A model generated the notes under the pieces. That model saw nothing but the letters and a program-made list of their open reading frames with translations, did no database searches and was not told the origin of the DNA. Shown piece by piece: positions 6,743 to 52,800 of a stretch of 64,000 nt of DNA. Location of the stretch: the NCBI GenBank assembly GCA_965153285.1, contig OZ229125.1. The stretch is one strand, 5' to 3'. Position numbers and translations under genes: made by a program. Origin of the DNA: Podarcis tiliguerta. Taxonomy: Eukaryota. Position 1 is the stretch's first letter. Each line of letters opens with the position of its first letter.

Positions 6743-7670
6743 ATCCAGAAGGCACCAGTTTGGCTCACAGAAACACAGAAAGATGCCTTATCCTGAGTCA
6801 GGCCATAGGTCTGTCGAGCTCAGCATTGTCTTCTCTGACAGGCAGCAGCTCTCGAGGGTATCCGCCAGGGCTCTCTCTTAGCAGACTGCCCTAAACAAAG
6901 AGATCCACTTCTTCCACAACATCCCAAGAGAACAAAGGACAGACAGATCAATTCAGCTGCTGGCAATCTCGACACAGGAATGAGATGGCGCAAGGCAGCT
7001 CCCCTTCCCCTGCCCCCCCTCACTCCCCCCTTCACCCCGCCTGAGTGCACATGGCCACCCTCTTCCTCTGATCTCCACAAACAATAACAATGGGGAAAAG
7101 AGGCCGGAATTTGCAGGGCCTATAATGAATTTGTGGATTACTATTGACTAAAGGACATGGCAGCTGTTTGGGGAGGGGTCCTCGGGAGATGGCCGCATTC
7201 CAAAGGCCTGGCTCATTCATTCCTGGAGAAGCTCAAAATAATTGGGGAGAGGGAGAGACGACTGACAACATGGGACTTGTTTTGAGTTAATGCCAGGATC
7301 ACTCATCCTGCTAAGTACTCCGTAGAGAAAGCCCCCACACCCAGCAAATTCAGGGCTCCCTGCTACAGGATTAACCATCAGGGTCCGTCCGTCCCCGATG
7401 AGAAAGGTGTGTCTAATTTTGGCTACCAAATACCTAACAGGGTAGCCAATATAATCTCTAATATAACATTCAGATAAAATTCTCTCTGACACTAATTTTA
7501 AAAATTGTGCGGAAGACAGTGTCTGCGGCAAACTTGTGTGTATCTGTGGAGCGAAAGACATGGCATGAAGGATGAAGAGATATTTGAATGTTGCCCTGAA
7601 CCAAGGCTTTTAATCCTGTATTAGCACATAAATGCGGGTGGTGCTGTGGGTAAAAGCCATAGCACATAAA

Positions 7671-8028
7671 CGCGGGTGGCGCTGTGGGTAAAAGCCTCAG
7701 TGCCTAGGACTTGCCGATCGAAAGGTCGGTGGTTTGAATCCCTGTGGCAGGGTGCGCTCCTGTTGCTTGGTCCCAGCGCCTGCCAACCTAGTAGTTCGAA
7801 AGCACCCCCGGGTGCAAGTAGATAAATAGGGACCGCTTACTGGCGGGAAGGTAAACGGCGTTTCTGTGTGCTGTGCTGGCTCGCCAGATGCAGCTTTGTC
7901 ACGCTGGCCACGTGACGCGGAAGTGTCTCCGGACAGCGCTGGCCCCCGGCCTCTTAAGTGAGATGGGCGCACAACCCTAGAGTCGGACACGACTGGCCCG
8001 TACGGGCAGGGATACCTTTACCTTTACC
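7671..8028 (+). mobile_element. Sauria SINE, near full length
   Basis: CGCGGGTGGCGCTGTGGG head and TACCTTTACCTTTACC tail. TSD TAGCACATAAA at 7660-7670 and 8029-8039. Confidence 0.93.
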
Positions 8029-11000
8029 TAGCACATAAAATGAGAGTACTGACCATGTGCAAGGCATAATTTGCAGGCAGGCTCAGCCTGGGGCCTGCTT
8101 TCATTGTCAGGGCTATTTTAATTTTTATTATCCCAACAAAGACAGGAGGTGACCCTGAACATGTGCAGAATGTGTTGTTTTCCATTGTGTAATGGCCGAA
8201 CATGCTCCTGAGCATATGCAGAATGCCTTCCCAGATGGGCAACCACATCCAGGTCAAGAAATGCAACATCCATACAGGACTGAGCGCCAGCCTCTTCCTC
8301 TAGAAATTAAGCACCAGTGGGGAAAAAAACACTGGGATTACATGTGGGAGACCTGAGTTCATGAAGCCAGTCACCTCAGTTGCCTTTCCATTACAAAATA
8401 GCTTACCTCCAGGGGGAAATCTTAAGGAGAAAACAGGGGGGGGGGGTTCTTTGTGGGTTGCCTTAGGTAGGCTTTTGGCTCTTTTCAAACTGCAAGGCCC
8501 CATTCACACATGCAGGTTTGTTTGCATGTGTGAACGAGTTTGTTGTAGAACAAACACCAGGCAGGTGGAATTCGTTCTGCCTCAACTCCAAATCCCTTGC
8601 TCTTTCCCATAGAAGTGGTTTCACAGACACTCAGCCGGGTGTCATCATGTCATCAAATGCTGAGTAATGGAGAGAGGCACATGAACAGGGTGATTTTAAA
8701 TCCTCGGGTTAACATAGCATATTCAAAACCCTAGTCTTTGGGGGCATGGGGAGCGATTATTCTTCCACCCTGCTTGCAAAACCTCAAGTTTCCGCTGGAA
8801 CATCTGCCTTATTATGGCCTGCCTCGTTTGGCACCCAAGAGGGACTTGGGGCTTTGTTGGCAGTGCTGCCCAATACAGCTGCCAACTGCAGAGGGCCTGG
8901 CTGGCGCCTGGCCAGAATGACGGAAACCTCTGCCTCTCCCCACCCGCTCCCCATTCTCGCAGCACCAGCTGGGGCCCCAGGACCCTCCCACCAGGCAAGG
9001 ACGGAAACCAGGCTGATGGCTTGCTTTCGAGATACTGAGAGGTATTGCATCATGCGAGGCCGCCTCGTTTCACAAGAAGTTGGAGGAGAAGTGGGAGGGA
9101 GTAGGCCACTGCTCTTTATATTTGTAAAATGAGAGGGGCTGGGGTGGAAGTCATAGCCTTCCACAATGGAAGGTAATTTACCATTGCCCTACATGAATAG
9201 GGGCAGGCTGTGGCTGGAACCCAGCACATGCTCAGGGGCACTCTGTTTGTCACTGCAGCTTCATTACAGTTCTCAGCTGTGCCTTGGCACTGAAAGGAGA
9301 GCCCCTGCCCCTTCCAAATAGGGGCACAACAGAAAACAGAGCCAAGCCCTCTTCTTTGGGAAAGGAACCCCCCCCAAAAAAAGTTTACCCCTCTCTTCTC
9401 CTCCCCCACCCCGCAAAAAACCCTAGTGGAACCAAAAAAGTTAGCAGGTAGACCAATGAGTCATCTATCCCAACCCCCTCTGTCCCAAGAAAGGATGTAT
9501 TTTACCTAAAACATCCTCAGCCCCAAGGAGGGAGATTCTCACATTTCTTAAGACGCTCACTCCAGTGTTAATTTAAAAGCCTTAGATAGGGCTCAATCTA
9601 TGTCTGCCATGGCATTTGTTCCTTCCATCCTCCGTGGAACTCCCTGACTCTTGATATATGCTAACAACTAAGCAGATGCACAGCAAGACCTTGAGCACTA
9701 TGTTGCTACAAAAGTTTACTCAGATGGAATGTCCCCCTGACTTCAATAGGACCTATTCCCTAATATTTGTGGCTTGGGGTTGCTGTGCAATAGTGCAAGT
9801 TTTTGAGGTTTCAGTTCTATTCCTGCTATGGGCTCAAGTGGCCTTGCTCAAGTCACATTTCCTCTCAACCTTGGTCCCCCATCTGTAAAATGGAAATATG
9901 CCACAGGATGTTTGTGAGAACAAATGTAATGCATTTGCAAGTTAAAAGTGCTATTAGCTATACATATATATCAATTAAAAACCAACAGAGTTGGGTTTGG
10001 GTCATCTTGATGTATAACCAACTTCATGCATCGCAGGGGTTAGACTAGATGGCCCTTGGGGTACCTTTCAAGTCTACAACTGTAATATTCTATCCCCCAC
10101 CCCTGTTGGCAAATACACTGCTTAGTTTTAACCAACCCACTAACACCAGCCTCAAGTATTTAGGCGTGCTCGATATTTACTAAACACATTAATTTGTGGC
10201 TGTTTATCCTCAAGCCATGTTAACATTCGCTTAAAAGGGGGGGAAAACTCTGAGGAGGAAAATAGAAGTTTTAAGAAGGAGCAGCTATTTTAAGCTCGGC
10301 GGTTCATATTTTGTTTTGAAATAGCTACAAAAATCCGTGCCTGTTATAGACATTCTTCCATCACGCACAACGGCCAATGAATAAATCTCCCCATAAGGGC
10401 AGCTGGAGCATAAAAGGTCCCCACCCACCCCCACCCTCTCTCTGCCTAATGCTGGGGAACTGAAGGGGTTAATGGTGGGAGGAAGCAGATAAACAGAGGC
10501 TGTTCCCTTTTCTTGGTTGTTTCATTTCACAAGGTTACTCCAAGGCTTTACTTTTGAACATTTTTTAAAAAAGAATCCACACTGTTAGGTCGCTCTCTTC
10601 TAGAGAAGCAGAGAGTTCCCTTCCTCCACTCTCCCCATGTTTGAATTAGCTCTTGATTTTATTTTGTTTTGACATGGGGGGGGGGGGCGGGAAATGGACG
10701 GACATAAGTAGATCAATTTCAGGCAAAGAAAAAGGCAACCTAACAGGGTTAGGCACCCTAACACCATCAGCACCCTAAAGCAAAAGGGATCTCAAGCCAC
10801 AATGTGTTAAAAGTCTGCCCAGAAACAGGGGTCCAGTTAGCCAAAGTTTCTGAATTGTGGTACCAGTTTTGCAACCTGAGCAGAAGCACAAGGTCCAATA
10901 CTGTATACAAAACTCAAAAGAGTTCTGCGCTAAACAGAGACATCTTGGAGAATGGCACGTGCTGTGGCCCTTTTGTGGAACCCATCTTGGGCTGGAGGAC

Positions 11001-12230: not shown

Positions 12231-12293
12231 CTTCAAGGCGATCTCCTTCGCACGATCACTTCTCGATCTGGCCAACGACTCTATCCGAGACAT
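12231..12293 (-). CDS. ARHGEF2: ARHGEF2 (GEF-H1) canonical first coding exon, MSRIESLARSRSDRAKEIALK
   Basis: ATG at 12293, 21 codons, then donor AAG|gtttgt at 12230 (phase 0). The peptide closely matches the mammalian GEF-H1 N-terminus MSRIESLTRARIDRSRELASK, same length. Too short for the ORF track. Confidence 0.93.

Positions 12294-15959: not shown

Positions 15960-16005
<46 letters not shown>
15960..16005. repeat. (GA)n microsatellite inside a CORE SINE fragment
   Basis: Expands from the SINE sequence AGGCTGAGAG. Confidence 0.9.
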
Positions 16006-17739: not shown

Positions 17740-18450
17740 TGCTTCTGGAAAGGCCACAAGCAGGACATGAAGGCACAGGATGCTCAGAGGTGTCCTGCTT
17801 CAAAAGATGGAGGCTCCGTGTTGCTGCCATGACTGGTTGCAGTTGCTAGAACCAACTTCCTCCATGGACGTGTCAAAAGGTCTTCCAAAGACAGAAAGCG
17901 GCTTTTGCCACAACTTGCAGCAGTGTATTCCTAGGATGGGGACGCGGGTGGCGCTGTGGGTTAAAGCCTCAGTGCCTAGGGCTTGCCGATCGAAAGGTCG
18001 GCGGTTCGAATCCCCGCGGCGGGGTGCGCTCCCGCTCTTGGGTCCCAGCGCCTGCCAACCTAGCAGTTCGAAAGCACCCCTGGGTGTAAGTAGATAAATA
18101 GGGACCGCTTACTAGCGGGAAGGTAAACGGCGTTTCCGTGTGCGGCTCTGGCTTGCCAGAGCAGCGATGTCACGCTGGCCACGTGACCCGGAAGTGTCTT
18201 CGGACAGCGCTGGCCCATGGCCTCTTTGAGTGAGATGAGCGCACAACCCTAGAGTCTGTCAAGACTGGCCCGTACGGGCAGGGGTACCTTTACCTTTACC
18301 TTATTCCTAGGATGAGGTATGCACTGTGTGAAGTATTTCCTTTAATCTGTGCTGTATTTACTGCCCCTTAGTTCTTTTGGTGGACCCTGAGTTCTAGTAT
18401 TATAGGACAGGGATTCCCTCCCCCCTCAATCTACTTCCCCTACACTACAT
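17740..18450 (-). mobile_element. Old CR1 3' fragment hosting the Sauria SINE
   Basis: CR1-like sequence continues across the TSD (...GTGTGAAGTATTTCCTTTAATCTGT...GACCCTGAGTTCTAGTATTAT). Confidence 0.6.
17939..18301 (+). mobile_element. Sauria SINE, full length, young, inserted into a CR1 fragment
   Basis: Highly similar to 7671-8028 with CpGs largely intact. Perfect 13-bp TSD TATTCCTAGGATG at 17926-17938 and 18302-18314. Confidence 0.95.
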
Positions 18451-37853: not shown

Positions 37854-37854
<1 letters not shown>

Positions 37855-37892
<38 letters not shown>

Positions 37893-37916
37893 CACACACA
37901 CACACACACACACACA
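37855..37916. repeat. Compound microsatellite (GACA)n(CA)n
   Basis: Directly visible. Confidence 0.93.
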
Positions 37917-39013: not shown

Positions 39014-39146
39014 CTTTGACTTCCCAGTCATCTTCTTTAAGAAGCTGAGGGTTCGCCCCAGGGTGGTCCCCTCCCTCTGCGGGTGCACCTGGTCTTCGGC
39101 CTCCACCGTGGTGGCGTCCAGCCGCCCGCAGCTCCCAGCGCCAAAG
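39014..39146 (-). CDS. ARHGEF2: Long-isoform exon E: FGAGSCGRLDATTVEAEDQVHPQREGTTLGRTLSFLKKMTGKSK
   Basis: Acceptor ccatgctttcag|C, donor AAG|gtaggg; 133 nt, phase 2 to 0 (same exit phase as canonical exon 1). GTTLGRTLSFLKKMTGKSK resembles AKAP13 GTKVSRTFSYIKNKMSSSKKSK, which directly precedes the KEKEK/C1 region. Confidence 0.88.
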
Positions 39147-39991
39147 CTGAAAGCATGGAAAAAGTGAGAAAGGAGGAAGGTAGCAAAACAAGCACACACT
39201 CACTCACTCACTGGTACCCAAGCCAAACAATCCCCCTTTTTGTTGTTATTGTTTCTAGGCCAGGAAGTAGGGAGGGGCCGGCTCCCTTGGCGGCCCCCAG
39301 TGACCTCAGAGGGTGGCTGCTCCTATTCCCGGCTGGGGAGAGGCAGCACAGAAGCATCACTGTTTGCTTAAGCTCCACTAGCAGCGAGCAGAAAAGAGGC
39401 AGGCTGCACATCATCACCTGGGCCATGAGCAGAGATTTCAGTGCCCCAGAACCTCTCACAGGCAGAGAGGCTCCCCCTCTGTGCCCATCTTGGGGTCTCT
39501 CCTGAAAAGGACTTCCATTAGTGCAGGAATCGACTGCCACGGATCTTTCACTGCTACTCTCATATTTGAGCTCATCACTCAAATCATTAAAAAAAAAACA
39601 GTTTAAAGCCTTGGTGCTTCCCTTTAAAGCCCTAAGCGGCTTGGCATCCAAATTCCTGAAAGCACACCCTTCTGCCCATTCCAGCTTGCTGACAGCCTCA
39701 GATCTTCTGCTGAGATCCTGATCCAAGTGCCTTCCTTACTGGAAGCGCAGGATGCAAATCCCAAAGAAGAGGTCTGGAATAGCATCCCTCAAGAGGCAAT
39801 CCTGGTGCCGACTTAATGATGTTTTCAGCACTGGGTTAATACATTTTAATTTACATCTTAATTCCCGTAATCCTTCACTCTGCTTTGTAATTCTTACCTG
39901 CTGTCTTTTACTGCAGATGCTCAGGTGAGTTTCTTATTGTATTGTATTAGGTTAGTTATCTATATCTGTTTTGATTAAACCGATTAAAGAG

Positions 39992-40215
39992 CCAGAATGT
40001 TTTTGCGGTTAGAGTGTTGAACTACTAGGACCTGGGAGAGATCAGGGTTCAAATTCCTGCTCAGCTGTGAAGTTCATTAGTTGTGACTTTGAGCTCAGTC
40101 ACTGCCTCTCAGCCTAACCTACCTCACAGGATTGTTATTGGGATTATATGAGGAGGGGGAGAACAATATACATCACCTTGAACTCCTTGGAGAAAAGATG
40201 GGATATAAATGCAAA
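39992..40215 (+). mobile_element. CORE/MIR-like squamate SINE
   Basis: GGTTAGAGTGTTG...GGTTCAAAT...CCTCACAGGATTGTT...GGGATATAAAT. Confidence 0.8.
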
Positions 40216-42659
40216 ACAACAACAACAGCCTGTCTCAAAAGTCAAAGCGGGGGTAACATATACAGTAATAATCTTATTATTATTTGTCTCTTATGAAAAA
40301 AAACAATATCTCCACCCCCTTTATATATTCTGGGGGAAAGTATTACTGAACTTTATTTATTTAGCACATTTGTACCCCACCCTTCAGCCAAAAGGGCTCC
40401 GACAGCAGCTCACATGCAATCCCTACCTGCAGGCTTACAATCTAAAAAATGTGGCATGTAAGGAAAAGGGACGGGGAGGGAAGAGGAAAATCAAAACCAA
40501 AACTCAGGCACCAGTTTCTGAACAGCTGTTCCTATAGTGCCCAGCTGGCACAGTTCAGGGGCAGGAGGTGCCTGGTGGAGCTGCCACAGCAGTGCTGATA
40601 GAGCAAACTCTGCTTCCTAGCTCTCCCACTGCTGGAAAGGCAAGACACAGCTCCTAAAGAAGGCAGCCCATGGAATAGCAGAAGTCCTACCAGATGAGTT
40701 CTGGTAATGAAGATGGGAATACGAATTGGCAGGGGCAGCGATGGGGAAGAACAGACACATTCTCAAATACTGGGGTGGGGGGTGGGGGAGACAGTAATCT
40801 GAATTTACAGAGAGGATGGTGGTGGTAATGTGTGATTGAGAATGCTGGGATTTCTATGGGACCTGACCTCTCCTCCATCTCTTGTCTTTGACTTCCTCAG
40901 CATAAGTTAAGCCCTCTGCGCCAGAAGGTATTTTCAATGTGTATGTTTTGTTTGATTTAAGAATTTATAAACTGCTTTATATAGACTAAGCAGTCAACAA
41001 GAATGTATAAAACCAAACAACCAACCAAATAATAAAACAAAATCACGAAGCTTTAATAAAAACTCTTCCTGTGAATTGGCTGCAACAGCAATTCAGCCGG
41101 GGGAAGGCCTGAGTTAGGTGCTGCTTCTTTTTTAATTGTTTTATTTAACCCAATGTTGACATGCTCCATAGCCAAATGTTAAAATTTATGGGGCAAGCAA
41201 GTTTGCTTATTGGGGTGAAAACTCCACTTTGGATCTTGTCATTCTCTAAGCTGCATAAGAAACAACACATGGTCAAGAGTTGTCTGTGGTACAATTTTCT
41301 CATGTTCAGTGCCTGTCTCTTTTTTAAGTTGTCCCCCTTTTACAATTCTGCCTACGCCTCAGGAGGTGTGTCAGAAAGCTCTCCCCCCCCCCCGGGAGGG
41401 GCAGATTAATCAATTTCAATTACTTTCTGCTTCTCATTTTCCCAATCTTAAATGCAGTTCTCCACATTTCCAGTTTGTATTTAAAAAGTCCTCAGGAAAA
41501 CCCATCACAATTTTACTATGGTTTCTCCTAATATACACATTTTTGTATGCAACTTTGCCAAATAGACACATTTAGCAAAGCAATTTTCCTAATGCATTGA
41601 AAACGGGGGTGGGGAAGTTATTTTTGCTCTCAAGACCATATCCTTATCAGGACTGGCTTTGCAGGCCAAATTTGACAGGCCACTGACCTGTCAATCATGT
41701 GATACTGTTATGATGTCACACGATTGCCGGGCAGGTGAAGCTGCCAGCACCCTCCTGTCAAAATTCTTCATGCAGCTTTGCAGGTCTTCCCACACTTCCC
41801 CCTTAAACCCAGTACTGGGGGTTTAAAAGAAGAACACAGGGAGACTTGCAAAGGCAACCACTATAGAGCAGTCTGTCTTAAAGCTGTAACAGGTCTTTTG
41901 AAGTAGCCTCCATCCTGTTCTTCTAAGGGGGAGGTTGCTTCAAAGTGTGTACAGTATTTGCCAAGCACTTTAAGACAGGATCGACTGCCTGTGCTCCTTT
42001 CTCTCTCTCTTCCACTTAACTCTAGAGAAAAAGGTGTTTTTGCAAGCAAAGGCAAGGAGGGGTGGGTGTGTCTCCCGTGCTCTGGTTTGCTTGCAAAATG
42101 CTCCCTTTAAGATTAGAGCAAGATGCAGACTTAGAAGGGAAGAGGGAAGAGGAAAGAGACTGGCAGTGACTTCTGTGAGTCTCCTTGTCCTTTTAAGTCC
42201 CTAATCTTACAGTGATCTCTAATCTCCATTCACCAGCAGATGAGCAGAGATTAAATCCTACTGCTAGGCCTTGGGATCCAATGCAAGGTTAAATCCTGCC
42301 CTCCTGCCCATCAGCTGATGTCACCAGTGACATCAGCTGATGGGAGTGGTTTGGGGAAAACAGCCTGATGGGCCAAAATGGACCCTCTGGAGGTCCAAGA
42401 TAGGTCCATTTGCCATAAATTCTCCACCACCAATTTAAAAAGTTTTTTAAAACATTTAATATCTTTAAAAACTCAATGTGGTATACAGTACACTGTGTAC
42501 AATGGAAAATCAATTTGCATTAAGACAAAAATATACCCTAAAAGAAATAAAACAGTTATTTATCTATTTAGTGCCCTTCTATCCCATATTTTAATTTTAT
42601 TTATTTATTGAATTTATATATCGCCCTATACCCGGAGGTCTCAGGGTGGCTCACAGAAC

Positions 42660-43010
42660 ATATTTTTCTCCAAGGAGCTCAAGATGGCATATATGGTTCT
42701 CCCCCTCATTTAATCTTCACAGCAACCCTGCAAGGTACGTTAAGGCTGAGAGGAGTGACAGTCCCATGGCCACATAGTGAGCTTCATAGCCAAGTGGGGA
42801 TTTGAACCCTCATCTCTCAGGTCCTAGTCCAACACTCCAACCACCATGCTATACTGGCTCTTAACTGGCTCAGCAACTAGATTTTGTAGTCGGGGTGGCA
42901 ATTATTTTCCTTTTCACCCAAGGTCACATTGAGCTACATGGCTGAGGGGATTTGAACCCTGGTTTCTTCCAGGTCCTAGCCCGGCACTCTAACCACTGCA
43001 CCACACTGTT
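42660..43010 (-). mobile_element. CORE/MIR-like squamate SINE, one full and one partial copy
   Basis: CTCCAAGGAGCTCAAG...GGATTTGAACCC...GGTCCTAGTCC, repeated in part at 42930-43008. Confidence 0.75.
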
Positions 43011-43606
43011 TTATTTTATAAAACAGATTGGGGGGGATTCTTACACATAGGTCAGGGTCCGAGCATGCATTTTTGTACATGATTTTCACTAGCATGCACG
43101 TTTATATGCAGGTTTTACCCCAGTATATGCATTTTTTGTAATGACTTGGCTGGAGAACTACACTGCAAAATTCAGAGAAGTGTAGGTTTCAAAGGAGGGC
43201 TGCATCTCTAGCTCTCCATGTCAACCCTAAAGCACTTGGCCTACGCATATCCCTGGTTGCTTTCTTTTTTGTATCCTCCCCACCCCACTGCCTGCAGACC
43301 TCTAAAAATAAAACTGGTACCAGTGATCCCTAGAGGGTAGGGGAGAAGGAGGTTTTCCTGGAGCATCAAGGGACCGTCAGCGGGGAAGATTTAACATTAG
43401 TCATAATTAAGCAGCTACAATTCTCCCCTTTAAAGTTAGACCTGTTATGGAAAAGTTGGATTACACATCTGAGCAGTGCAAAGAGATATCAGCCAAACAA
43501 TGCTGCCATTCCCCTTGAGACCAAGGACTCCCAGGTCAGGAGCTGAGCTACGAGCTCAAATCCCACCACCCTCAGTCATATCTGAAGGGCAAGAAGTGTG
43601 ACTCAC

Positions 43607-43646
43607 CCATTGGACAGGCTCACAGTGTCACCATAAAGGGAGATCC
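43607..43646 (-). CDS. ARHGEF2: Long-isoform exon D (40 nt): (G)ISLYGDTVSLSN(G)
   Basis: Strong acceptor ctcttctcccttcccttgccag| and donor AATGG|gtgagt. Phase 1 to 2, exactly what is needed to join exon C to exon E in frame. Confidence 0.82.
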
Positions 43647-43862
43647 CTGGCAAGGGAAGGGAGAAGAGACATATTTTATCTACTTGAATGACAAGGTATA
43701 TATATCACCTTTCTACTTCAGAAAGTCCTCATGTGTTACCTGCTTTAAAATCACAACAGTGAAATATCAACAATGAAAACCATGGAAACAAAACTGACAG
43801 CGACAAGGAGGGTGAATCCAGATAGGGGCAGATCTTAATGCTGGAAATGGGTTATTGAGATA

Positions 43863-43957
43863 TCATAGAATCAGAATTGTAAAGGTCAAGCCCCAGAAAC
43901 GCAAGAATATGCAATTGTCCCTTATGGGGATCAAACCTGCAACCTTGGCATAATCAT
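43863..43957 (-). mobile_element. tRNA-Ile-derived SINE fragment with CR1 tail
   Basis: Minus strand TGATTATGCCAAGGTTGCAGGTTTGATCCCCATAAGGGACA resembles the tRNA-Ile 3' half, then GCATATTCTTGC...ATTCTGATTCTATGA. Confidence 0.62.
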
Positions 43958-45074
43958 TGCACAGGGCTTGTTTGCAACAAGTCCCCCCCCCCCCTTATAC
44001 AAATATTGAGGCACATGGTCACCCAGAGCTACCAGTATATGCAAATGTCTGCCTCATTTAAGACTATAGAACCTTTATTCTTTATAATAATGGAACTCAC
44101 AGGTGGATAATACTTTTATTTTTACATGTCTTTATTATTTTTGTATTATTATTTATTATTTGTAAAAGGAATATTTTATTTACCCATTTGGAGCTGTGTT
44201 GTATTTTTATACTTTTGACCTTCTGGTCAGTCATACTTTACAGTTTATATTTTTGATTCTTTGTTTCTTCTCTTTTTCTTATGTTTGCACATTCTGTTGC
44301 TGTTAATAATAAATTAATACTTTAAATAAGTTTTTTTGAACATTGGATTTTCATACAAAAGATAAATCCAGATTTTTAGGGAGTGGGGATATGGACTAGC
44401 ATTTTGATGCCAATAATGGTGCCTGGGGGCTGCAAAAAACACACACACACACAAAACTTGCAAGCATGAGCAGCCCCCATCATACAATAAACCTCCATCT
44501 GGAAGCCCCACAACTAAAGCAGCAGCATAAGCAGAGCAAAACTGCAGAAGTTAATTACTGGTTAAAACCCCAACAGTACAGAACAGGGAACAACAACAAG
44601 GACATCTCCCTGGAGAGGGAATTTCAGAGGTGGAGTGGAATTGCAGAGAGCGCCCCCTCTCCAGCCACAACCCCACCTGACTTTCAAAGGCAGCTGGCAG
44701 CTGGATGAAGACCTCATCTCAGAAGAGAGTCTTAACGGGAGGGAAGGCTTCACCTGAGAGAGCAGGTGGTCCTTCAGACACCACCTGCTCTTGGTCTGTT
44801 TTGGCGTTTGAACATGCAAGAACCCCACAGAGGGAGCAACGAGGAGCGGCTAGACGCTAGAGGCTCAGTGGTAGAACATCCACTCTGCATGCCTAGGGCT
44901 GAACCCAGGCTCCAGAAAATCCTACTTTTTAAAAACACAGTGGAACAACTGTGCAATTTCCCCAGGTGTAATGACCTATTGTGCAGCTATTCAACAGCCT
45001 GGCTAGCCAGTTATGGCCTATATAGATTGCTCCAGCCATTTTCCTCTCTCCTCTCTAGGAATCATCACTTAACC

Positions 45075-45771
45075 CAGTGCTTCCCAAATGTTTTCGGGCC
45101 ACCACACCCATGGTTCCCTAACCTCACCTCCAGTGCCCCTTGCCCTGTAAAAACATTGTTCAGAATAGCAGTTTGCACAACCCACTATGGAAGATAATAA
45201 CACAAAAGAATTCTAAACACTAACAATTAATTGCACATTCGTTCAAAGTCTAGTTAAAACTACAGTGGTGCCTCGCAAGACGAAAAGAATCCGTTCCGCG
45301 AGTCTCTTCGTCTAGCGGTTTTTTCGTCTTGCAAAGCAACCCTATTAGCGGATTAGCGCTATTAGCGGTTTAGCGGCTATTAGTGGCTATTAAAGGCTTA
45401 AGGGATTAGCGGATTAGCTGCTAAAAGGCTATTAGCAGCTTAGTGCCTTAGAAAAAGGGGGTGGGGAGCGAAAAAAAATCGCAAGAATCACAAGACATTT
45501 TCGTCTTGCGAAGCAAGCCCATAGAGAAATTCGTCCTGCAAAGCGCATTGAAAAACGGAAAACCCTTTCGTCTAGCGGGTTTTCCGTCTTGTGAGGCATT
45601 CGTCTTGCGGGGCACCACTGTATTCAGTTTAATTAATTCAACAAAACTGATGAATTTGATCCAACGATACCAGCTTTTCAAAATCTGATGTCATTTACAC
45701 CACCAGCACCTCACTCAGGAAATTCCACTACCCCCCTCAGGTAGCACTACCACCCACATTGGGAATCACTA
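45075..45771. mobile_element. hAT (Charlie-like) non-autonomous element hosting the Tigger-like MITE
   Basis: Termini CAGTGCTTCCCAAA and TTGGGAATCACT are inverted repeats typical of hAT MITEs. No clear 8-bp TSD remains. Confidence 0.6.
45263..45620. mobile_element. Tc1/mariner-pogo (Tigger-like) MITE with an internal (ATTAGCGG)-like tandem array
   Basis: TIRs CAGTGGTGCCTCGCAAGACGAA and TTCGTCTTGCGGGGCACCACTG; TA TSD at 45261-45262 and 45621-45622. Confidence 0.92.
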
Positions 45772-46117
45772 AAAGAGAATCACTTCTCTTTTCACATAGC
45801 ATACCCTCTATATTGTTTTCTTCCCTGTGCCCCCCCCCCCAAACTGCACTTGGGGTGGCTAATCATGATCAGGAGTACTGTGAGAGCAAAAGCCAGCATT
45901 TAACCCCCCCTCCCCCAAGCCTAGTGAAAATCACCCTCCCTTTCCCCTCACAAACATATGGGGCTGGGGAAAGTGCGCCAGCCTGGCTACAGAATGTTAT
46001 TTGGATTCCAGAGGTCTGGAACCAGAGTTTCAATTCCACTTCCAGGATAGCAGTGATTGGGTGCTGCTTAATGGTCCACACCTAGAAATGCCCCACCCCA
46101 CAAATCTCCACACTCAC

Positions 46118-46229
46118 CATCTGCTTCTGCCGGGTAGCTGTCGATGCCACTCATGGAAACAGATTTGGACAGAGAGCTACCATTGGAGTTCTGGGATGCA
46201 TGATATGCTTGCATCCTCTTGGAATGTTC
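46118..46229 (-). CDS. ARHGEF2: Long-isoform exon C: EHSKRMQAYHASQNSNGSSLSKSVSMSGIDSYPAEAD(G)
   Basis: Acceptor ctcattttcag|, donor GATG|gtgagt; 112 nt, phase 0 to 1. SSLSKSVSMSGI resembles AKAP13 SSPLTKSISLMTI. Confidence 0.87.
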
Positions 46230-47152
46230 CTGAAAATGAGAGCGGGCTATTAATGTCACAAACACCACCAGAAGCCCTGGGCAAAGGATTCCTCACTTCA
46301 GCAGCAGGAGGGCATAGAAATCTGGGACACATACACTCTACCGATCTAAAGCCCAGCTTACTGCTTCTCTAGCTTTCAGTAAACTAAAAGCTACCCACTT
46401 CTTCATTATTATTTCAGAAGTCACCCATGGCCGGTCCTTAATGAAACTTGGCTGAAACTAAGTTTTGATACAGGCTGAAGTGAGGGGAAGATAAAACCAC
46501 ATTCTTAATATGACGTTCTACCGTTTTTAGCAACCATTATGACAACAAAGGAGAATATGTAAGAGCTTATTTTCAGTCACTAAACCTGCTTGAAATGCCA
46601 TGGGATCCCCTAAAGCATCTGAAACTGGATATTCATTCTTTCATTGACATGGATACCTGTGAGCTAAATGGGTCCAGAGGGCCTCTCTCTCCACACAGGT
46701 GTATCAAGAGAGGCTCCAACCTCCTCCACCAGCTCCTAGGGCCCCAGCCAACAGCCAGAGCAGTTGGAAATTCTGTTCCAACTGCCAGCTGCCCAGGGAC
46801 TGCAACAGCCAAAGGGGAGGGTCACTCTGGCCTCTAACCTTGGCTGGAGGAGCAAGAGCCACTGAGCCACTGCACTGCCTCCATCCATGCTAGGGAAAAT
46901 CAACCTGGCCCTGAAGGGGAGATGCAAGTGACTGTCAACATCTTGCTGCCTCATTCTAGCATAATCAAATCAATCCCTCCTGTAACTTCCTTCTGTCTAA
47001 TGTGACCCTTTTGTTTCTTATCCTTTTTCATCTGTAAGCCAGGCGTCTACGTACAGCGTCTTCCACCAACATTTTGCACCCTAAATTTTAACAAAATGAC
47101 CTTTTGGGGGGTCTGGAAAGTGGGAATAAAAAATCTAAACATACATCCATAC

Positions 47153-47324
47153 CTGAGAGAATTCCTGGTCATCCTCCTCTTCATCCTGAGAGAGCATGGA
47201 CTCCGTCTCATCGTTGCTACGGATAATAGGGGCTCGGCGGGGGTCCCTTTGGCTCTGAGGATGTCCGTCCAGTTGCTCGGTGGAGGAGTCAACTTCCTCG
47301 TGGGCTAGTCCTTTCATACTCATG
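47153..47324 (-). CDS. ARHGEF2: Long-isoform exon B: (S)MSMKGLAHEEVDSSTEQLDGHPQSQRDPRRAPIIRSNDETESMLSQDEEEDDQEFSQ
   Basis: Acceptor cttccttttcag|C, donor CAG|gtatgg; 172 nt, phase 2 to 0. The junction reads QRSMSMKGL (cf. AKAP13 RRSFSLEGL), and ESMLSQDEEE resembles DSLVSLSEED. Confidence 0.87.
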
Positions 47325-47525
47325 CTGAAAAGGAAGCCAATCAGACAGTCAAGAGCTTAAATGTGATTCCATGTTGAGCTACTCACATCCAGTTATAAAG
47401 GACCTTTCCACTGCAGACTCAAATCTGAGCATTTTTCAAAAGTGCACAGATATAGCAGGGTGCAACTGTTAAAATAGTGGTTGCACCAAGTTCATATTCA
47501 CAGCCTGATATCAGTTTCCCAACTT

Positions 47526-47704
47526 GCTATGCACTCATGTGCGGGCCAGCTAGCCAAACCAGTGTGGCATAGAGGATAGTGTGCTAGGCCAAGACCTTGG
47601 AGGCCAAACAGCTGCGAGAACCGTGGCCTCCAAGGTCTTGGCCCAGCACACTAACTTCTATGCCACACTGGTTTGGCTGGCTGGCCTGCACACGAGTGCA
47701 TGGC
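47526..47704. repeat. Inverted repeat: 81-bp arms (47526-47606 and 47624-47704), 17-nt loop
   Basis: The arms are reverse complements with 7 differences in 81 bp. Confidence 0.93.
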
Positions 47705-49044
47705 CATACTCACTATACTCACCAGAGCTTGCTGGACTTGACATCCATCAGAAACCCAGCAAATCCCTTCTGTGTGTAATGAGATTTTTGTCTCTCTCCC
47801 ACCACCACCTTCCCAAAGCTCTTGAGAAGCTGCTTCTGACTTGTAGAGGCACACTTCCTTCTCTAGAGCTCCCCACCGCTGAAAACATTTGCAGAAGTGG
47901 GGAGAGTTTCAGTCTTTCCAAGCAACTCTTTTTGCAGAGAAAGCGAAGACAAGGGGGGTGGCGCTGGAAATCCCAAGTGGGTTTGTCCTCAAGTCAGAGG
48001 CAGAGGAGCCATACTTTAATATATGCTATTTAATTCTATTATTATTATTATTACAACAATTTATTATATGCCCTTCACCCTAAGGTCCCAGGGTGGGCTA
48101 CAACAATTAAACCACAATATTAAAAACAGTTTTAAGCAACTTACGAACACAGAAACAAGGTGGGCCCTAAAACATACATTTCAAGGGTCAAAGGTCAGGG
48201 TAAAGATCCGCTAAACCTGGCGCCAAAGACGGTAGGGAAGAAGGTTGTATTTCAAGTTTTGGGGGGATCTGAATTGTTTAGGGTTTTGAACACTACGGTG
48301 AGCACCTTTAATTGGGCCTGGAAGCGAACAAGCAGCTGTTTCAAAACACAGGTGTTAAAGGGAACCCCAGCCAGAAATCTGACTGCAGCATTTTGTCAGA
48401 CGTCAAGGTTCAATAGTTAAAAAGGCATGATAAAGTTAATTTTAAAAATTGCCTTATACAGAGTCAGACAAATTGGCCCATCTCGGTACTGCTTACATTG
48501 AATGGCAGTGGTTCTCTAGAGTTTTCAGGCAGGGGGCATTCCTAGCCCTACTTGGGGAAGCCAGGGATTGAACCAATGTCTTCAAATCTCCCTGCAAACA
48601 AATTAGGATGCTCAATGAACAGGTTGTCTGGAATAGACCGTAGCAAGAAAACGCCTTGCTGCCAGCAGGGGGCAACCCAAGACTGGTTTGGATGGGACCA
48701 TCCAACCAAGCTGAGTTTGCGAAGATCCCCACTCCACGCCACAGAGTTCAGGTGCTTCCAGGTGCAAGTTTACAGTCAAGGGTTGGAATAGCAGTGAAAA
48801 TGGTAGCTGGAAAAATGGGTACATGTACAAATTCCATACACAGAGTGGGGCTGGGGGGAGCAGACCTGAGACAGCACCCCTGTGTGGAAGCAGCCAACTC
48901 ACACAGCACATAAATTCTGGGGGATTTGCTGCCACAAGGTGCAGTGATGGCTGCAAACTCAGACAACTTTAACAGGAGGTCAGACAAATTCATATAGAAT
49001 TCAGAAGGGTATCAATGGCTACCAGTCACAATGGCAATGCTTCT

Positions 49045-49270
49045 TTTACTTATTTATTGCATTTATATCCTACCTTTTCCCTCCATGCAGCTGAAAGTGG
49101 GTCTCCCCCTCCTCCTTTAATCCCCACAACAATCTTGCAAGGTAGGTTAAGCCAAAAGGCGGTGACTGCCTCAAGGCCACCCTGTGAGCTTCATTGCCTG
49201 GTGGAAATTTGAATCCTGGTCTCTCCTAGGTCCATGTCCAACCCTCTAACCACTGCACCACACTGGCTCA
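49045..49270 (-). mobile_element. CORE/MIR-like squamate SINE
   Basis: Same family; further copies at about 50860-51055 (-), 58398-58597 (-), 60328-60500 (+) and 26300-26705 (+, fragments). Confidence 0.78.
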
Positions 49271-49881
49271 ATCTTTTACCTCTTCTATCCGATGTGGCCA
49301 GCCAGGGTCAGAAGCAAAAGTGGGCAGAGCAATAGATGTGTACAGTAGGGTACATTCTATTTAACGTTTCTGTACACACACCTCTCTATGCAGGCAAGCA
49401 AGAGGCATTAACACAGTTCAAGGACACATTCCAGCCAGGTAAGAGCACTTGATATAGGTGAGCAGCAGAGCCGGTGAGTGGCCATGCCCAAAGGCAGGAC
49501 CCAGAGAGGCCTGGAGGGCTCTATTTGGATACACACCCACCCACCCTGAGCCTAAGATCTCACATGCTTGCTTTATGATGCTGGGTCCCAAGAGCTTCCA
49601 AATTTTACAATAATTCGGACCATTTTCTTCACATTTCCTAGCTAGCTGAAGAAGTGAACTATTCTGAGCACCTGCAGAGAGCTAGGCCCTCATCACTGCA
49701 GGCTGTACAATTAAATTGGATTTGGTGTTCTTTTGCAACAAACCCATCCTCCACCCCCGGAAAGCAACCTGGAGGTTTTCATAGGGAGAAAAGTCACAGG
49801 AAAATGCACCAGACAGACAGTGTGAAATAACAATTGCTTGACGCAACATCTTATACCCTTCCCCACAAATGAAAATGAATA

Positions 49882-50118
49882 CAGTGGTTCCATAGTTTAC
49901 AAACTTAATCCGTTCCGGAAGTCCGTTCTTAAACCAAAGACATGCTTTCCCACAGCAGCGGGGAACTCAATTTACAAATGGAACACACTCAACAGGAAGC
50001 AAAACATGTTCTGCTTCCAAGGCAAAGTTCACAAACCAAAACACCTACTTCCGGGTTTGCAGCATTCTGAATCCAAGTTGTTCATAAACTAAGCTGTTCT
50101 TAAACCAAGGTACCACTG
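49882..50118. mobile_element. Tc1/mariner-pogo (Tigger-like) MITE
   Basis: Imperfect TIRs CAGTGGTTCCATAGTTTACAAAC and GTTCTTAAACCAAGGTACCACTG; TA TSD at 49880-49881 and 50119-50120. Confidence 0.85.
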
Positions 50119-50690
50119 TACTCAATAAGCAGCCCAATGTTCCCTAACCATCACCCCGCAAACAAATCTGGATGAATGCCAAGAAAGCAGCCTTTCTGTG
50201 GTCTGGATGACGGTTTTGTGTGGACACCCCACAACCATTCTATATTAAATGGTTTGTGTAGGAGCAGCCACAGGGTGCTCCCAGGTGACCTGTTTATTAA
50301 GAATTCAATCCTGATTTTTTTTTGATTTTTTTTTTTTTTGCAGGGAGGTTAGATGACAAAGAAAGTGTTATTCCATATTTTCTATTGCATTTGCTCAATA
50401 CTTATTTTCTCATCACTCATTACTGCAAAAAGTTTGATCACGGGGGCAAGCAAATTTGTTGGAATGTGATTGAATGCCTACCTGAAGTTAGTCTGTATTT
50501 GTGAGCTTCTACTAAAATACATGAGCACAAGAACTGAGGTGCATCATATTTCCCACTAAGATATTTAACAGAGTGTCTGAAAGCTGAAAAACAACGGTGC
50601 TTGTAACAAGACAAAAAGGGAGACAGGGATTTTCCAGAAACCTGGATCAGAAAATAGGAGCTGTACTAAGTAAAGAGTGGCAGTTGAAGT

Positions 50691-50692
<2 letters not shown>

Positions 50693-50773
<81 letters not shown>

Positions 50774-50852
50774 GAGCACTTCCAGGTGTGGGTTTATTGT
50801 GAGATGGGTGCTCCTCACTCAGGCAATGATTGATTGATTGATTGATTGATTG
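50693..50852. repeat. (GT)n(GA)n microsatellite and nearby (GATT)n
   Basis: Directly visible at 50693-50770 and 50826-50852. Confidence 0.92.
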
Positions 50853-51689
50853 GCCTGCATAGCCCACCTTTTTCTCCTAGGAGCTCAAGGTGGTGTACAG
50901 AGTTCTTTCCCTCTTCATTTAATCCCTACAACAATCCTATGAGGTAGGTTAGGTTGAGAGGCAGGGACTGGCCCATGGTCACCCAGGCAACTTCACATGG
51001 CCGAGTGGGGATTTGAACCCTGGTCTCCCAGCTCCTACTCTGATACTCGAACCACCAGCTCTCAACATCCACAGGACCTCATTAGTATCAAAACACCATC
51101 TTGTATTTCTACCCCACCCCGAATTTATTCCAGATCTACCCTTTCAGTTACAAAAAACCCCACCCTGTGTTGCCCACAATGCATTTGCAATTTCTGCTGC
51201 CTTCTGGAGCAACCAGTAGAAGCCTGGGATATGCTCAGCCCTGCTTAAAGACCGCCTTTTCCTGAGTGAGGTCAGCTTCTGGCTTGAACAAGCACCTGAC
51301 ACAGTTTTCCACTCAGGGTCAAGCCCTAGCACCACCCTTGCGATAAATTCAGTCTCCCCCACCCTTGCCAGCCTAGCTGTTTTAAGCTCTTAAAAGAGTA
51401 CAAAGGCTCCCTGAACATGGAACTAGCTAGAACCTCAGAGCCTAAACTCTCCTACAGAAACAGTGCAACAGATATGCAGCCCCAGAAGCCAAGGCTTTGT
51501 CCAGACACCATAGATCAGGAAAGGCTATTTTCCAAGACAGACTGCTGAGAGGGAGAGATAAAAGAGGAACAAAAGCAGCAGAGACTGATGGGAAGACCAA
51601 AAAGGGACACATGACTTCAGAAAAAGAAGCTGGGCATCACTTGCAGAATCTGAAAGACTCTATTCCCACAAATGAGATTTTTCAGGGGA

Positions 51690-52050
51690 GCCCTTCTCTC
51701 AGCCTCATCACCCTCAGAGGCATGCTTGGTGGGCTAACAGGAGAGGGCCTTCTCAGCAGCTGCTCCTAAGCTTTCAAACTCCCTTCCTACAGAAGTTAGA
51801 CTGGCTCTTTCTTTGTTTTCCTTCTGCCAGCAGGTGAAGACTTTCCTGTTCCAACAGGTTCTTGGAAATGGACTGTTTTTAAGGAAAGGGCTGGTGCTGT
51901 GATGTTTTTTATTGCCATTATCTGATAGTTCTTATATGTAGTTTTAAGTTTACCCATGTTTAATTGTTGTTTAATTATTGTGGTCCCCCCCACTGGTCTC
52001 TATTTTATCTGAAAGCCGCCTTGAGTCCCTGTCAGAGGAAAAGGTGAGAT
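51690..52050 (+). mobile_element. L2 LINE 3' end with (TAAA)n tail
   Basis: GAGAGGGCCTTCTC...AAACTCCCTTCC...GGTGAAGACTTTCCTGTTCC...GAAAGCCGCCTTGAGTCCC...ATAAATAAATAAATAAAT. Confidence 0.72.
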
Positions 52051-52467
52051 ATAAATAAATAAATAAATAACTATCATCAACATCATCTACCCTCTTGAAA
52101 GGACACTAGGATCGCTTCCACATTACCTATTTACCCAGCTTTCTTCCTGATTTATTTGCAGGGTGGTTATACTCAGATGATTACATGGGTTGCTCACTGA
52201 GCATCCATCCTGATTTGTTTGCAGGGAAGTTATATGACTGTTTCATCAAGTAATTGCTAACACACTTTCCTGTGCATCTCCCCATTACATTTCTTACCGC
52301 AAAAAGTCTAATTTTGTATGGGAGTGGCAGGTTTATGGTCTGGGGGCCCTATGTGCATTCCTTTCTGGGGTTGCCTTTCCCTGTCAGAGTACCTGGAGGC
52401 AAATTCCCCTTCACCACAAACAGACAGATGAATGACCAATTACATTTCTAATATTACTATGGTTTAC

Positions 52468-52800
52468 CTTCGCTGATCAAAATCCGGGTCATCCTCAAGC
52501 ACTTTCCCTGGCTCCCAGCTGTGTCTCCGGAAGGAGTCGTAGGCATGACCAGAACTCCCAAGGATGCCCAACCTGCGCATGTTAACACCCAGGAATCGAT
52601 CTTCCTCTTCTTCCTCTTCCATCTCTTCCCAGCCTCCTGCGGGAGGCTCCACAGCTGACAAGCAGCGGCGCTTCTGGACCCGTGAAGGGCAAGGAGTGCA
52701 TTCACAGGGGCTCAGGACCAGCTCGGAGGCAGAACTGCTCATTCCCCAAGGAGCTCGTGGATCCAAAAGGCAGAAAGGCTTTGCGGAATGAAAAGGGGGG
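52468..52800 (-). CDS. ARHGEF2: Long-isoform exon A: (PPFH...)MSSSASELVLSPCECTPCPSRVQKRRCLSAVEPPAGGWEEMEEEEEEDRFLGVNMRRLGILGSSGHAYDSFRRHSWEPGKVLEDDPDFDQR; candidate ATG at 52742
   Basis: Acceptor ctctttctccag| before 52800 and donor CGAAG|gtaaac after 52468 (phase 2); open frame throughout. The acidic run and FRRHSWEPGK resemble AKAP13 EEEEMD...PFRRHSWGPGK. Confidence 0.85.

What the first reader, a model, noticed from the sequence alone, without database searches (positions are those of the whole stretch)
39014..52800. Five-exon, 244-aa AKAP13-like alternative N-terminus for GEF-H1 (ARHGEF2)
Seen in sequence: five GT-AG exons (275 coding nt from ATG 52742, plus 172, 112, 40 and 133 = 732 nt) join in frame with no stop. 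They exit in phase 0, like canonical exon 1 at 12231-12293, so they can replace the 21-aa MSRIES leader on exon 2. Established knowledge: ARHGEF2, AKAP13, ARHGEF18 and ARHGEF28 are Lbc-family paralogs, and GEF-H1 is usually described as starting just before its C1 domain. Recalled similarity: the motifs occur in AKAP13 order (acidic run, FRRHSWxPGK, RSxSxxGL, acidic SLS-like patch, LSKSVS, GTxxxRTxSF/YxKxM..KSK). Inference: this lizard keeps a long, ancestral-type GEF-H1 isoform from a distal promoter, with an AKAP-Lbc-like phospho-regulatory arm. Automated annotation may already predict it, but I know of no functional description.
Basis: partly seen in the sequence, partly recalled or inferred. 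Interest (0 to 1): 0.85.

Follow-up and report, generated by a model that had tools for sequence, protein, structure and literature searches.

The report
Known long GEF-H1 isoform N-terminus
The five exons are real and encode the N-terminal leader of a long form of the Rho activator GEF-H1 (ARHGEF2), but this form is found across vertebrates, is already annotated in related lizards and in human, and was functionally described in mammals in 2025-2026, so the finding is correct but ordinary.

Summary
Observation confirmed. Five minus-strand GT-AG exons (52742-52468, 47324-47153, 46229-46118, 43646-43607, 39146-39014) give an open 732-nt frame that ends in phase 0, like canonical exon 1 (12293-12231).

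The peptides match, exon by exon and in order (94-100% identity), the N-termini of RefSeq "rho guanine nucleotide exchange factor 2 isoform X1/X2" of Podarcis muralis, P. raffonei and Zootoca vivipara. In those models ...KKMTGKSK joins NKEKERMKE...YTNGHLF (exon 2, C1 domain).

The same arm is predicted in fish, amphibians, turtles, crocodilians, birds, marsupials and many eutherians including human. In mammals it sits on mRNA-sized contigs. So it is not something this lizard specially keeps.

A 2026 Nature Communications paper describes the mammalian orthologue (ARHGEF2-219 / Arhgef2-207). It has a distal promoter, and its leader binds actin through the RHSWGP motif and a nearby helix, which places GEF-H1 at adherens junctions.

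The AKAP13 likeness is only partly verified. The FRRHSWxPGK core matches the published AKAP13 Ser1565 peptide at 9 of 10 positions. The other motifs could not be tested.

Novelty: already known.

The parts
52468..52742 (-). Arm exon 1, coding part from ATG 52742. It encodes 91 codons plus 2 nt: MSSSASEL..RRCLSAVEP, an acidic run, FRRHSWEPGK, ..DFDQR.
   Evidence: Sequence and frame. 96.8% identical to Podarcis muralis XP_028564799.1 residues 1-93. phmmer found 30 relatives, all ARHGEF2 arms apart from one repetitive protein matched only in short stretches (P0024).
52503..52529 (-). RRHSWEPGK motif (Ser codon at 52518-52520). It fits the basophilic R-R-x-S-hydrophobic kinase consensus. It corresponds to the RHSWGP actin-contact motif of human ARHGEF2-219 and to the AKAP13 Ser1565 site.
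   Evidence: R, H, S and W are invariant in a 15-sequence arm alignment. AKAP13 peptide LSPFRRHsWGPGKNA. RHSWGP is required for ACTG1 binding in PMC13696713.
47153..47324 (-). Arm exon 2 (172 nt, start phase 2): SMSMKGL..RDPRRAPIIRSNDETESMLSQDEEEDD..
   Evidence: 98% identical to lacertid RefSeq long isoforms.
47177..47248 (-). RDPRRAPIIRSNDETESMLSQDEE. This stretch aligns with the 51-71 actin-interface helix of human ARHGEF2-219 (EALFLQIREGLDTFLGLQHQG).
   Evidence: Alignment of 25 arms. AlphaFold2 predicts a short helix here in the snake arm, residues 127-135. Paper. Human sequence check.
46118..46229 (-). Arm exon 3 (112 nt, phase 0): EHSKRMQAY..SSLSKSVSMSGIDSYPAEAD. The Met in KRMQAY is the start of a mid-length RefSeq isoform (1047-1048 aa).
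46140..46172 (-). LSKSVSMSGID motif, conserved from bichir to primates. It is the 'TGMLSK' motif of the 2026 paper.
   Evidence: A weak internal repeat of it (SLSKSVSTTNI) lies after the C1 domain.
43607..43646 (-). Arm exon 4 (40 nt, start phase 1): GISLYGDTVSLSN.
   Evidence: 100% identical to lacertid models.
39014..39146 (-). Arm exon 5 (133 nt, start phase 2, ends phase 0): GFGAGSCGRLD...LGRTLSFLKKMTGKSK, with donor AAAG|gtaggg.
   Evidence: 100% identical to P. muralis and P. raffonei. In those proteins it is followed directly by NKEKERMKESKDARYTNGHLF.
39014..39061 (-). LGRTLSFLKKMTGKSK tail motif (L-x-R-x-x-S-hydrophobic), a predicted short helix. It is the 'GSSLR-TFSFL-GMTG' motif of the 2026 paper.
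   Evidence: (helix 225-237 in the snake arm).
12231..12293 (-). Canonical ARHGEF2 exon 1 (MSRIESLARSRSDRAKEIALK, phase 0). It is the mutually exclusive alternative to the five-exon arm.
   Evidence: 100% identical to P. raffonei isoform X4 residues 1-21.

Best explanation
The five exons are the isoform-specific 5' coding exons of the long, distal-promoter transcript of ARHGEF2 (GEF-H1). This is the lizard orthologue of human ARHGEF2-219 and mouse Arhgef2-207.

Transcription from a promoter upstream of 52742 skips canonical exon 1. Exon 5 of the arm (phase 0) is spliced to exon 2. This places a 244-residue, mostly disordered leader in front of the C1-DH-PH-coiled-coil body.

The leader carries short conserved motifs: RRCLSAVEP, an acidic run, FRRHSWEPGK, RDPRRxPII plus an ELESLLS helix, LSKSVSMSGI, and LGRTLSFxKKMTGK.

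By orthology with the mammalian protein, it most likely adds an actin and Nectin-3/afadin binding surface (the RHSW(G/E)P motif plus the helix). That would move GEF-H1 from microtubules and tight junctions to adherens junctions in polarised epithelia.

Shown here: exon structure, frame, orthology, deep conservation, predicted disorder. Inferred: the splice to exon 2 in this animal, expression, and function.
For: Exon structure and frame.

Orthology to lacertid models: exon-by-exon identity of 94-100%, in order, to RefSeq ARHGEF2 X1/X2 of P. muralis, P. raffonei and Zootoca, where the arm joins NKEKERMKE..YTNGHLF.

Breadth: long isoforms of about 1120-1280 aa carrying PF00130, PF00621 and PF17838 are predicted in teleosts, bichir, amphibians, turtles, crocodilians, birds, squamates, marsupial and eutherians including human XP_011508441.1.

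Transcripts: Logan contigs of only 4-6.5 kb carry 1167-1193-aa ORFs with the arm motif, C1 and DH together. These must be spliced mRNAs.

Conservation: arm identity to Podarcis is 69% (gecko), 47% (Xenopus) and 39% (macaque), with conserved motifs.

Structure: AlphaFold2 gives mean pLDDT 53.9 and three short helices. No Pfam domain is found.

[quoted passage not shown] Human P0185 has exactly these residues at these positions.
Against: Exon 2 lies outside the window, so the last junction is not seen.

Function is transferred from mammals, whose arms are only about 39% identical and have lost the SxSLKGL and RDPRRxPII motifs.

The lizard has E where mammals have G in RHSWGP.

Several genomes annotate the arm as a separate small 'uncharacterized' protein that reads through the last donor (P0005, P0022, P0030). 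An arm-only product is therefore not excluded.
Confidence: 0.82

Rival explanations
1. The arm is chiefly an AKAP-Lbc-type phospho-regulatory module. A basophilic kinase such as PKA phosphorylates the Ser of RRHSW. 14-3-3 docks there, perhaps together with the C-terminal RRRSLP site, and holds the GEF inactive. It could coexist with actin binding, for example if phosphorylation switches actin binding off.
For: The FRRHSWxPGK core is 9 of 10 identical to the AKAP13 Ser1565 peptide. Ser1565 is reported as a PKA site whose 14-3-3 binding inhibits GEF activity. R, H, S and W are invariant across arms. GEF-H1 already uses a PKA/PAK site, S885, for 14-3-3. The motif lies in predicted disorder.
Against: A 2022 study found that S1565A alone did not reduce 14-3-3 binding to AKAP13, and that T2467 was dominant. 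The motif has Pro at +3, not the +2 of the canonical mode-I 14-3-3 site (read from the sequence). The only functional study of the long isoform assigns RHSWGP to actin contact and does not mention PKA or 14-3-3.
Confidence: 0.25
2. The five exons belong to a separate small upstream gene that makes an arm-only protein of about 250 aa ending by read-through of the last donor. The long ARHGEF2 models would then be read-through artefacts of gene prediction.
For: Arm-only predicted proteins exist in snake, canary, antbird, colobus and Xenopus (P0005, P0022, P0019, P0030, P0020).
Against: More than 150 independent long models join the arm to C1-DH-PH. mRNA-sized Logan contigs carry the whole ORF. 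A 130-kDa protein was detected with arm-specific antibodies and by mass spectrometry, and deleting the arm exons removes it. The phase-0 exit matches exon 2.
Confidence: 0.04
3. The exons are conserved in sequence, but in this lizard they are not expressed or are only a minor non-functional transcript.
For: No expression data for this species could be obtained. No CpG island lies at the distal start.
Against: All five frames are intact with consensus splice sites. Identity to congeners is 94-100%, and to geckos and snakes 69-72% after roughly 200 million years (divergence time from general knowledge). That level is not expected without purifying selection. Canonical exon 1 also lacks a CpG island in this genome.
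Confidence: 0.05

Closest known systems
Human ARHGEF2-219 / mouse Arhgef2-207 (long GEF-H1 isoform; human XP_011508441.1), described in PMC13696713
   Same: Same gene and same position upstream of the canonical first exon. The leader has the same order of motifs: RHSW(G/E)PG, a helix, LSKSVSMSGI, RT(L/F)SF..GMTGK. It makes the same join to the exon encoding (N/T)(K/R)EKE(K/R)MKE..YTNGHLF.
   Different: Only about 39% arm identity. The lizard keeps the SxSLKGL and RDPRRxPII motifs and the RRCLSAVEP plus acidic start, which therians or hominids have changed or lost. The lizard has E instead of G in the actin-contact motif. Function has not been tested in any non-mammal.
RefSeq ARHGEF2 isoform X1/X2 of Podarcis muralis (XP_028564797.2, XP_028564799.1), P. 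raffonei (XP_053224123.1) and Zootoca vivipara (XP_060125536.1)
   Same: Identical exon blocks, 94-100% identity per exon, the same start MSSSASEL/MSGSASEL, and the same junction ...KKMTGKSK|NKEKERMKE.
   Different: A few substitutions and the length of the acidic run. The window therefore comes from another, closely related lacertid.
AKAP13 (AKAP-Lbc) region around Ser1565, upstream of its C1 domain
   Same: The core F-R-R-H-S-W-x-P-G-K is shared. Both lie in disordered sequence N-terminal of a C1-DH-PH module of the same RhoGEF subfamily.
   Different: No AKAP13 protein was returned by three word-indexed searches or by a full phmmer scan with exon 1. Any similarity beyond this motif is weak or was out of reach, because the length filter excludes full-length AKAP13. 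No RII-binding (PKA-anchoring) element is known or was seen in the arm.

Membership tests
Long ARHGEF2 isoform (ARHGEF2-219 / Arhgef2-207 type leader) | Leader exons lie in the ARHGEF2 locus, upstream of and on the same strand as canonical exon 1 | tested here: met
   Arm exons are at 52742-39014 and canonical exon 1 at 12293-12231, both on the minus strand.
Long ARHGEF2 isoform (ARHGEF2-219 / Arhgef2-207 type leader) | Collinear sequence homology to leaders of annotated long isoforms | tested here: met
   94-100% per exon to lacertid RefSeq models. E-values from 1e-158 down to 1e-3 to long isoforms across vertebrates. Human and primate long isoforms fall in the same family.
Long ARHGEF2 isoform (ARHGEF2-219 / Arhgef2-207 type leader) | Conserved motifs RHSW(G/E)PG, LSKSVS and RT(L/F)SF..GMTGK named in PMC13696713 | tested here: met
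   All are present in the window's exons 1, 3 and 5.
Long ARHGEF2 isoform (ARHGEF2-219 / Arhgef2-207 type leader) | Last leader exon splices in frame to the exon encoding the start of the C1 domain | not testable with these tools
   Exon 2 is outside the window. The phase-0 exit fits, and orthologous models show the join.
Long ARHGEF2 isoform (ARHGEF2-219 / Arhgef2-207 type leader) | Transcript and protein are expressed in this organism | not testable with these tools
mRNA-sized contigs were seen for mammals only.
Long ARHGEF2 isoform (ARHGEF2-219 / Arhgef2-207 type leader) | Leader binds actin and Nectin-3/afadin and localises to adherens junctions | not tested
   Known for human and mouse only. 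This needs an experiment.
AKAP13 (AKAP-Lbc) pre-C1 regulatory arm | Ser1565-type motif FRRHSWGPGK | tested here: met
   Window YDSFRRHSWEPGKVL against the published LSPFRRHsWGPGKNA: 9 of 10 core residues are identical.
AKAP13 (AKAP-Lbc) pre-C1 regulatory arm | Significant similarity along the arm, with the remaining motifs in the same order | tested here: inconclusive
   No AKAP13, ARHGEF18 or ARHGEF28 hit at E<=1e-3, at E<=0.01 or at E<=10. The length filter excludes full-length AKAP13, and no AKAP13 sequence could be fetched for a direct alignment. NCBI's 'AKAP13-like' names for P0021 and P0023 are only a hint.
AKAP13 (AKAP-Lbc) pre-C1 regulatory arm | PKA anchoring (RII-binding amphipathic helix) | not tested
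   No Pfam domain was found in any arm exon. No specific search for an RII-binding helix was made.
Canonical 14-3-3 mode-I site (R-S-x-pS-x-P) | Arg at -3 (or -4) and Pro at +2 relative to the phospho-Ser | tested here: not met
   In R-R-H-S-W-E-P, Arg is at -3 and -2 but Pro is at +3. It fits the PKA-type R-R-x-S-hydrophobic pattern instead. AKAP13 Ser1565 has the same spacing.

The most novel reading that the evidence does not exclude
The RHSW(G/E)PG actin-contact motif of long GEF-H1 is the same ancient element as the AKAP-Lbc Ser1565 PKA/14-3-3 site. It would have been inherited from the common ancestor of the Lbc-type RhoGEFs. Phosphorylation of its invariant Ser would then act as a switch that releases the long isoform from actin and adherens junctions, possibly handing it to 14-3-3. 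That would link cAMP signalling to junctional RhoA activation. Neither the 2026 paper on the long isoform nor the AKAP13 papers read here makes this connection.
Probability: 0.25. Interest if true: 0.5.

Novelty: already known. Interest (0 to 1): 0.22.

Why it matters
For genome annotation, it confirms that the distal five-exon leader should be attached to ARHGEF2 in lacertids. Several squamate, bird and primate annotations wrongly call it a separate hypothetical gene.

For biology, it shows that the junction-targeting leader just described in mouse and human is ancient. It is shared with ray-finned fishes and a coelacanth fragment, and non-mammals keep extra conserved motifs (SxSLKGL, RDPRRxPII) that mammals lost.

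The one small new point is the near-identity of its core motif with the AKAP-Lbc Ser1565 site. This gives a directly testable hypothesis for how actin binding of long GEF-H1 could be regulated.

Tried and rejected

As a result there is no dN/dS across squamates and no direct look at the mRNA contigs. I used protein-level conservation and the contig-length metadata instead.

3. Direct AKAP13 comparison. A phmmer scan of 1.84 billion representatives with exon 1 returned no AKAP13, ARHGEF18 or ARHGEF28. Three word-indexed searches with frog, lizard and macaque arms did not either (the last two at E<=10). One search was a rejected max_evalue setting. The length filter cannot reach full-length AKAP13, so a blank is not evidence against homology.

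4. ESM Atlas: no usable hit.

5. Pfam on four exon peptides: nothing.

6. PDB sequence search with exon 1: only chance-level hits through the acidic run.

7. Papers. The string 'RRHSW' and other AKAP13 phosphosite numbers gave nothing useful. A supplement look-up in PMC6313912 gave no peptides.

8. Rfam on the whole window: no match.

Exons were searched one by one by reference. Database proteins such as P0067 served as full-length stand-ins. My script carried split codons across junctions only to check the frame.


Full report
**1. Observation**

On the minus strand, five exons have the stated boundaries: 52742-52468, 47324-47153, 46229-46118, 43646-43607 and 39146-39014. The four internal acceptors are AG preceded by pyrimidine tracts. 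All five donors are GT with good consensus: AAG|gtaaac, CAG|gtatgg, ATG|gtgagt, TGG|gtgagt, AAG|gtaggg.

A script that carried the split codons from exon to exon gave 275+172+112+40+133 = 732 nt. It found no stop, start phases 0/2/0/1/2, and a phase-0 end. The ATG at 52742 is the first ATG in its open frame.

Canonical ARHGEF2 exon 1 (MSRIESLARSRSDRAKEIALK, 63 nt, phase 0) is at 12293-12231. Exon 2, which encodes NKEKERMKE...YTNGHLF and the C1 domain, is not in the window. The final junction therefore cannot be seen here. The window contains no N.

Exons were searched singly by reference. Database proteins served as full-length stand-ins.

**2. What it is**

phmmer of exon 1 (91 aa, by reference) against 1.84 billion representatives gave 30 hits. 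One was a repetitive protein matched only in short stretches (P0024). The others were the same N-terminal arm. It appeared either as short arm-only predictions or at the front of full-length proteins such as the frog XP_077116333.1, "rho guanine nucleotide exchange factor 2 isoform X1". In that protein the arm runs straight into NKEKEKMKE...YTNGHLF, C1, DH and PH.

Region-restricted searches with frog and lizard arms found long ARHGEF2 isoforms of about 1120-1280 aa, with Pfam C1, RhoGEF and PH domains. The groups covered were teleosts, bichir, caecilians, salamander, frogs, turtles, alligator, birds, snakes, geckos, other lizards, opossum and many eutherians.

The closest were the RefSeq isoforms X1/X2 of Podarcis muralis, P. 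raffonei and Zootoca vivipara. Exon by exon, the window's peptides are 94-100% identical to them and in the same order.

The window thus comes from a lacertid very close to Podarcis. The gene model is already in public annotation.

**3. Is it only a lizard feature?**

No. A search with the macaque arm found 113 long isoforms in primates (including human XP_011508441.1 and XP_011508438.2), rodents, ungulates, whales, carnivores, bats, xenarthrans and others.

It also found unnamed Logan ORFs of 1167-1193 aa on contigs of only 4-6.5 kb. These ORFs contain the arm motif, the C1 start and the DH motif in one frame. The arm exons alone span 13.7 kb of genome here. Such contigs can therefore only be spliced mRNAs.

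A 25-species alignment shows conserved islands in otherwise variable sequence:
- RRCLSAVEP
- an acidic run
- VPLRR
- FRRHSWEPGK (R, H, S and W invariant)
- SxSLKGL and RDPRRxPII (both lost in therians)
- an ELESLLS segment
- LSKSVSMSGI
- CGQLD
- LGRTLSFxKKMTGK

Arm identity to Podarcis is 69% in a gecko, 72% in a snake, 59% in a turtle, 47% in Xenopus and 39% in macaque. It is always lower than for the rest of the protein, which is 86, 83, 80, 68 and 68%.

No Pfam family matches any arm exon. AlphaFold2 on a 15-sequence arm alignment gives mean pLDDT 53.9 and pTM 0.24. It predicts three short helices, at the ELESLLS segment, the start of exon 3 and the RTLSF tail. The arm is a disordered leader that carries short linear motifs.

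**4. How it works**

The literature search first suggested that only short isoforms had been studied. A later search found PMC13696713 (Nat Commun 2026; preprint PMC12776446, December 2025).

That paper shows the following:
- The long isoforms, human ARHGEF2-219 and mouse Arhgef2-207, are made from their own promoter, named P1 in the paper.
- They are the main GEF-H1 form in differentiated intestinal epithelium.
- They migrate at about 130 kDa.
- They localise to adherens junctions with Nectin-3 and afadin.
- They bind actin through the isoform-specific N-terminus.
- Actin binding needs both RHSWGP (residues 26-31) and a helix (residues 51-71).
- Deleting the leader exons breaks the epithelial barrier.

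Human XP_011508441.1, which sits in the same family as the lizard arm, has RHSWGP at 26-31 and that helix at 51-71. In my alignment these correspond to the window's RRHSWEPGK (52529-52503) and RDPRRAPIIRSNDETESMLSQDEE (47248-47177).

The best-supported mechanism is therefore a leader that retargets GEF-H1 to actin and adherens junctions. For the lizard this is inferred by orthology, not shown.

**5. The AKAP13 idea**

I could not fetch any AKAP13 sequence. The full phmmer scan and three indexed searches returned no AKAP13, ARHGEF18 or ARHGEF28. The indexed searches cannot see proteins as long as full-length AKAP13.

One recalled motif could be checked against a published peptide. The supplement of PMC10099770 lists AKAP13 Ser1565 as LSPFRRHsWGPGKNA. 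The window has YDSFRRHSWEPGKVL, so 9 of the 10 core residues F-R-R-H-S-W-x-P-G-K are identical. Hominid GEF-H1 arms even have FRRHSWGPG. Chance is a very unlikely source of nine fixed residues including W and H, upstream of the C1 domain of a paralogue.

NCBI's automatic name "A-kinase anchor protein 13-like" for two marsupial arm fragments points the same way. The other motifs and their order remain untested.

Ser1565 is reported as a PKA site whose 14-3-3 binding inhibits AKAP-Lbc. The same 2022 paper found that S1565A alone did not reduce 14-3-3 binding and that T2467 was dominant. The motif fits the PKA-type R-R-x-S-hydrophobic pattern. It does not fit the canonical mode-I 14-3-3 spacing, because Pro is at +3.

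The 2026 paper on the long isoform mentions neither AKAP nor 14-3-3. A phospho-switch on this Ser that regulates actin binding is an open, testable idea. It is not a finding.

**6. Rivals**

- A separate upstream gene. This is suggested by arm-only predictions that read through the last donor. It is contradicted by the many joined models, the mRNA contigs and the antibody, mass-spectrometry and knockout data in mouse.
- A silent relic in this lizard. This is unlikely given intact frames, consensus splice sites and the level of conservation. For the same reason, dN/dS was not computed.

**7. Verdict**

The isoform is not peculiar to lizards. It is already annotated in congeners and in human, and its mammalian orthologue now has a functional description. 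The only small addition is the verified identity of its core motif with the AKAP-Lbc Ser1565 site. Novelty: already known. Interest: low.

Noticed in passing
window 46118-46229 (Met codon in KRMQAY of arm exon 3): Lacertid RefSeq also has mid-length isoforms (P. muralis X4, 1048 aa; Lacerta agilis X2, 1047 aa). They start at the Met inside arm exon 3 (MQAYHASQ...) and keep exons 3-5. This implies a further start site or a non-coding first exon between arm exons 2 and 3, or upstream.
   Followed up: partly
not in window (expected beyond coordinate 1, in the intron between canonical exon 1 and exon 2): A fourth N-terminal class exists in Podarcis: MSYPTVYERQLRLGVSRPCRDPPSPGMSWNRRQPSRRGTVAK, in 1000-aa isoforms. 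It has no match in the window. A fifth class starts at MKESKD in exon 2 (950 aa).
   Followed up: partly
window 46140-46172 versus residues 370-380 of P0067: The arm motif SLSKSVSMSGI is echoed after the C1 domain as SLSKSVSTTNI in the same protein (8 of 11 identical). This hints at an old internal duplication or a shared kinase or docking motif.
   Followed up: no
alignment; proteins P0096, P0121, P0159 and others: Therian mammals have lost the SxSLKGL and RDPRRxPII motifs that sauropsids, amphibians and fishes keep. They also changed RRHSWEPGK to KRHSWGPGR.
   Followed up: partly
P0185, P0184, P0181, P0182: Hominid long isoforms begin differently (human MARMLYPSKGQG..., gorilla and chimpanzee MGEIKEGNG...). 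They lack the RRCLSAVE plus acidic-run start that macaque, lemur and all other vertebrates have. They carry FRRHSWGPG, identical to AKAP13.
   Followed up: no
window 7601-8200 and 17801-18400: These are the only CpG-rich patches of the window (GC 0.53-0.58, CpG observed/expected 0.67-0.84, against 0.24 overall). The first holds a 38-bp tandem duplication at 7622-7696. Neither the distal ATG exon nor canonical exon 1 lies in a CpG island. They may be promoters of other ARHGEF2 transcripts or repeats.
   Followed up: no
window 15960-16005, 50721-50770, 37854-37916: Perfect (GA)23 and (GA)25 microsatellites and an (ACAG)16 array lie in the introns.
   Followed up: no
database proteins P0004, P0021, P0023, P0062, P0095, P0151: Public names for arm-bearing proteins are often wrong. 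Examples are 'nucleoprotein' (Varanus), 'A-kinase anchor protein 13-like' (two marsupials), 'TBC1 domain family member 16' (Platysternon) and 'rho guanine nucleotide exchange factor 1a' (bichir, Megalobrama). Arm-only 'uncharacterized LOC' entries also occur in canary, colobus and coelacanth.
   Followed up: partly
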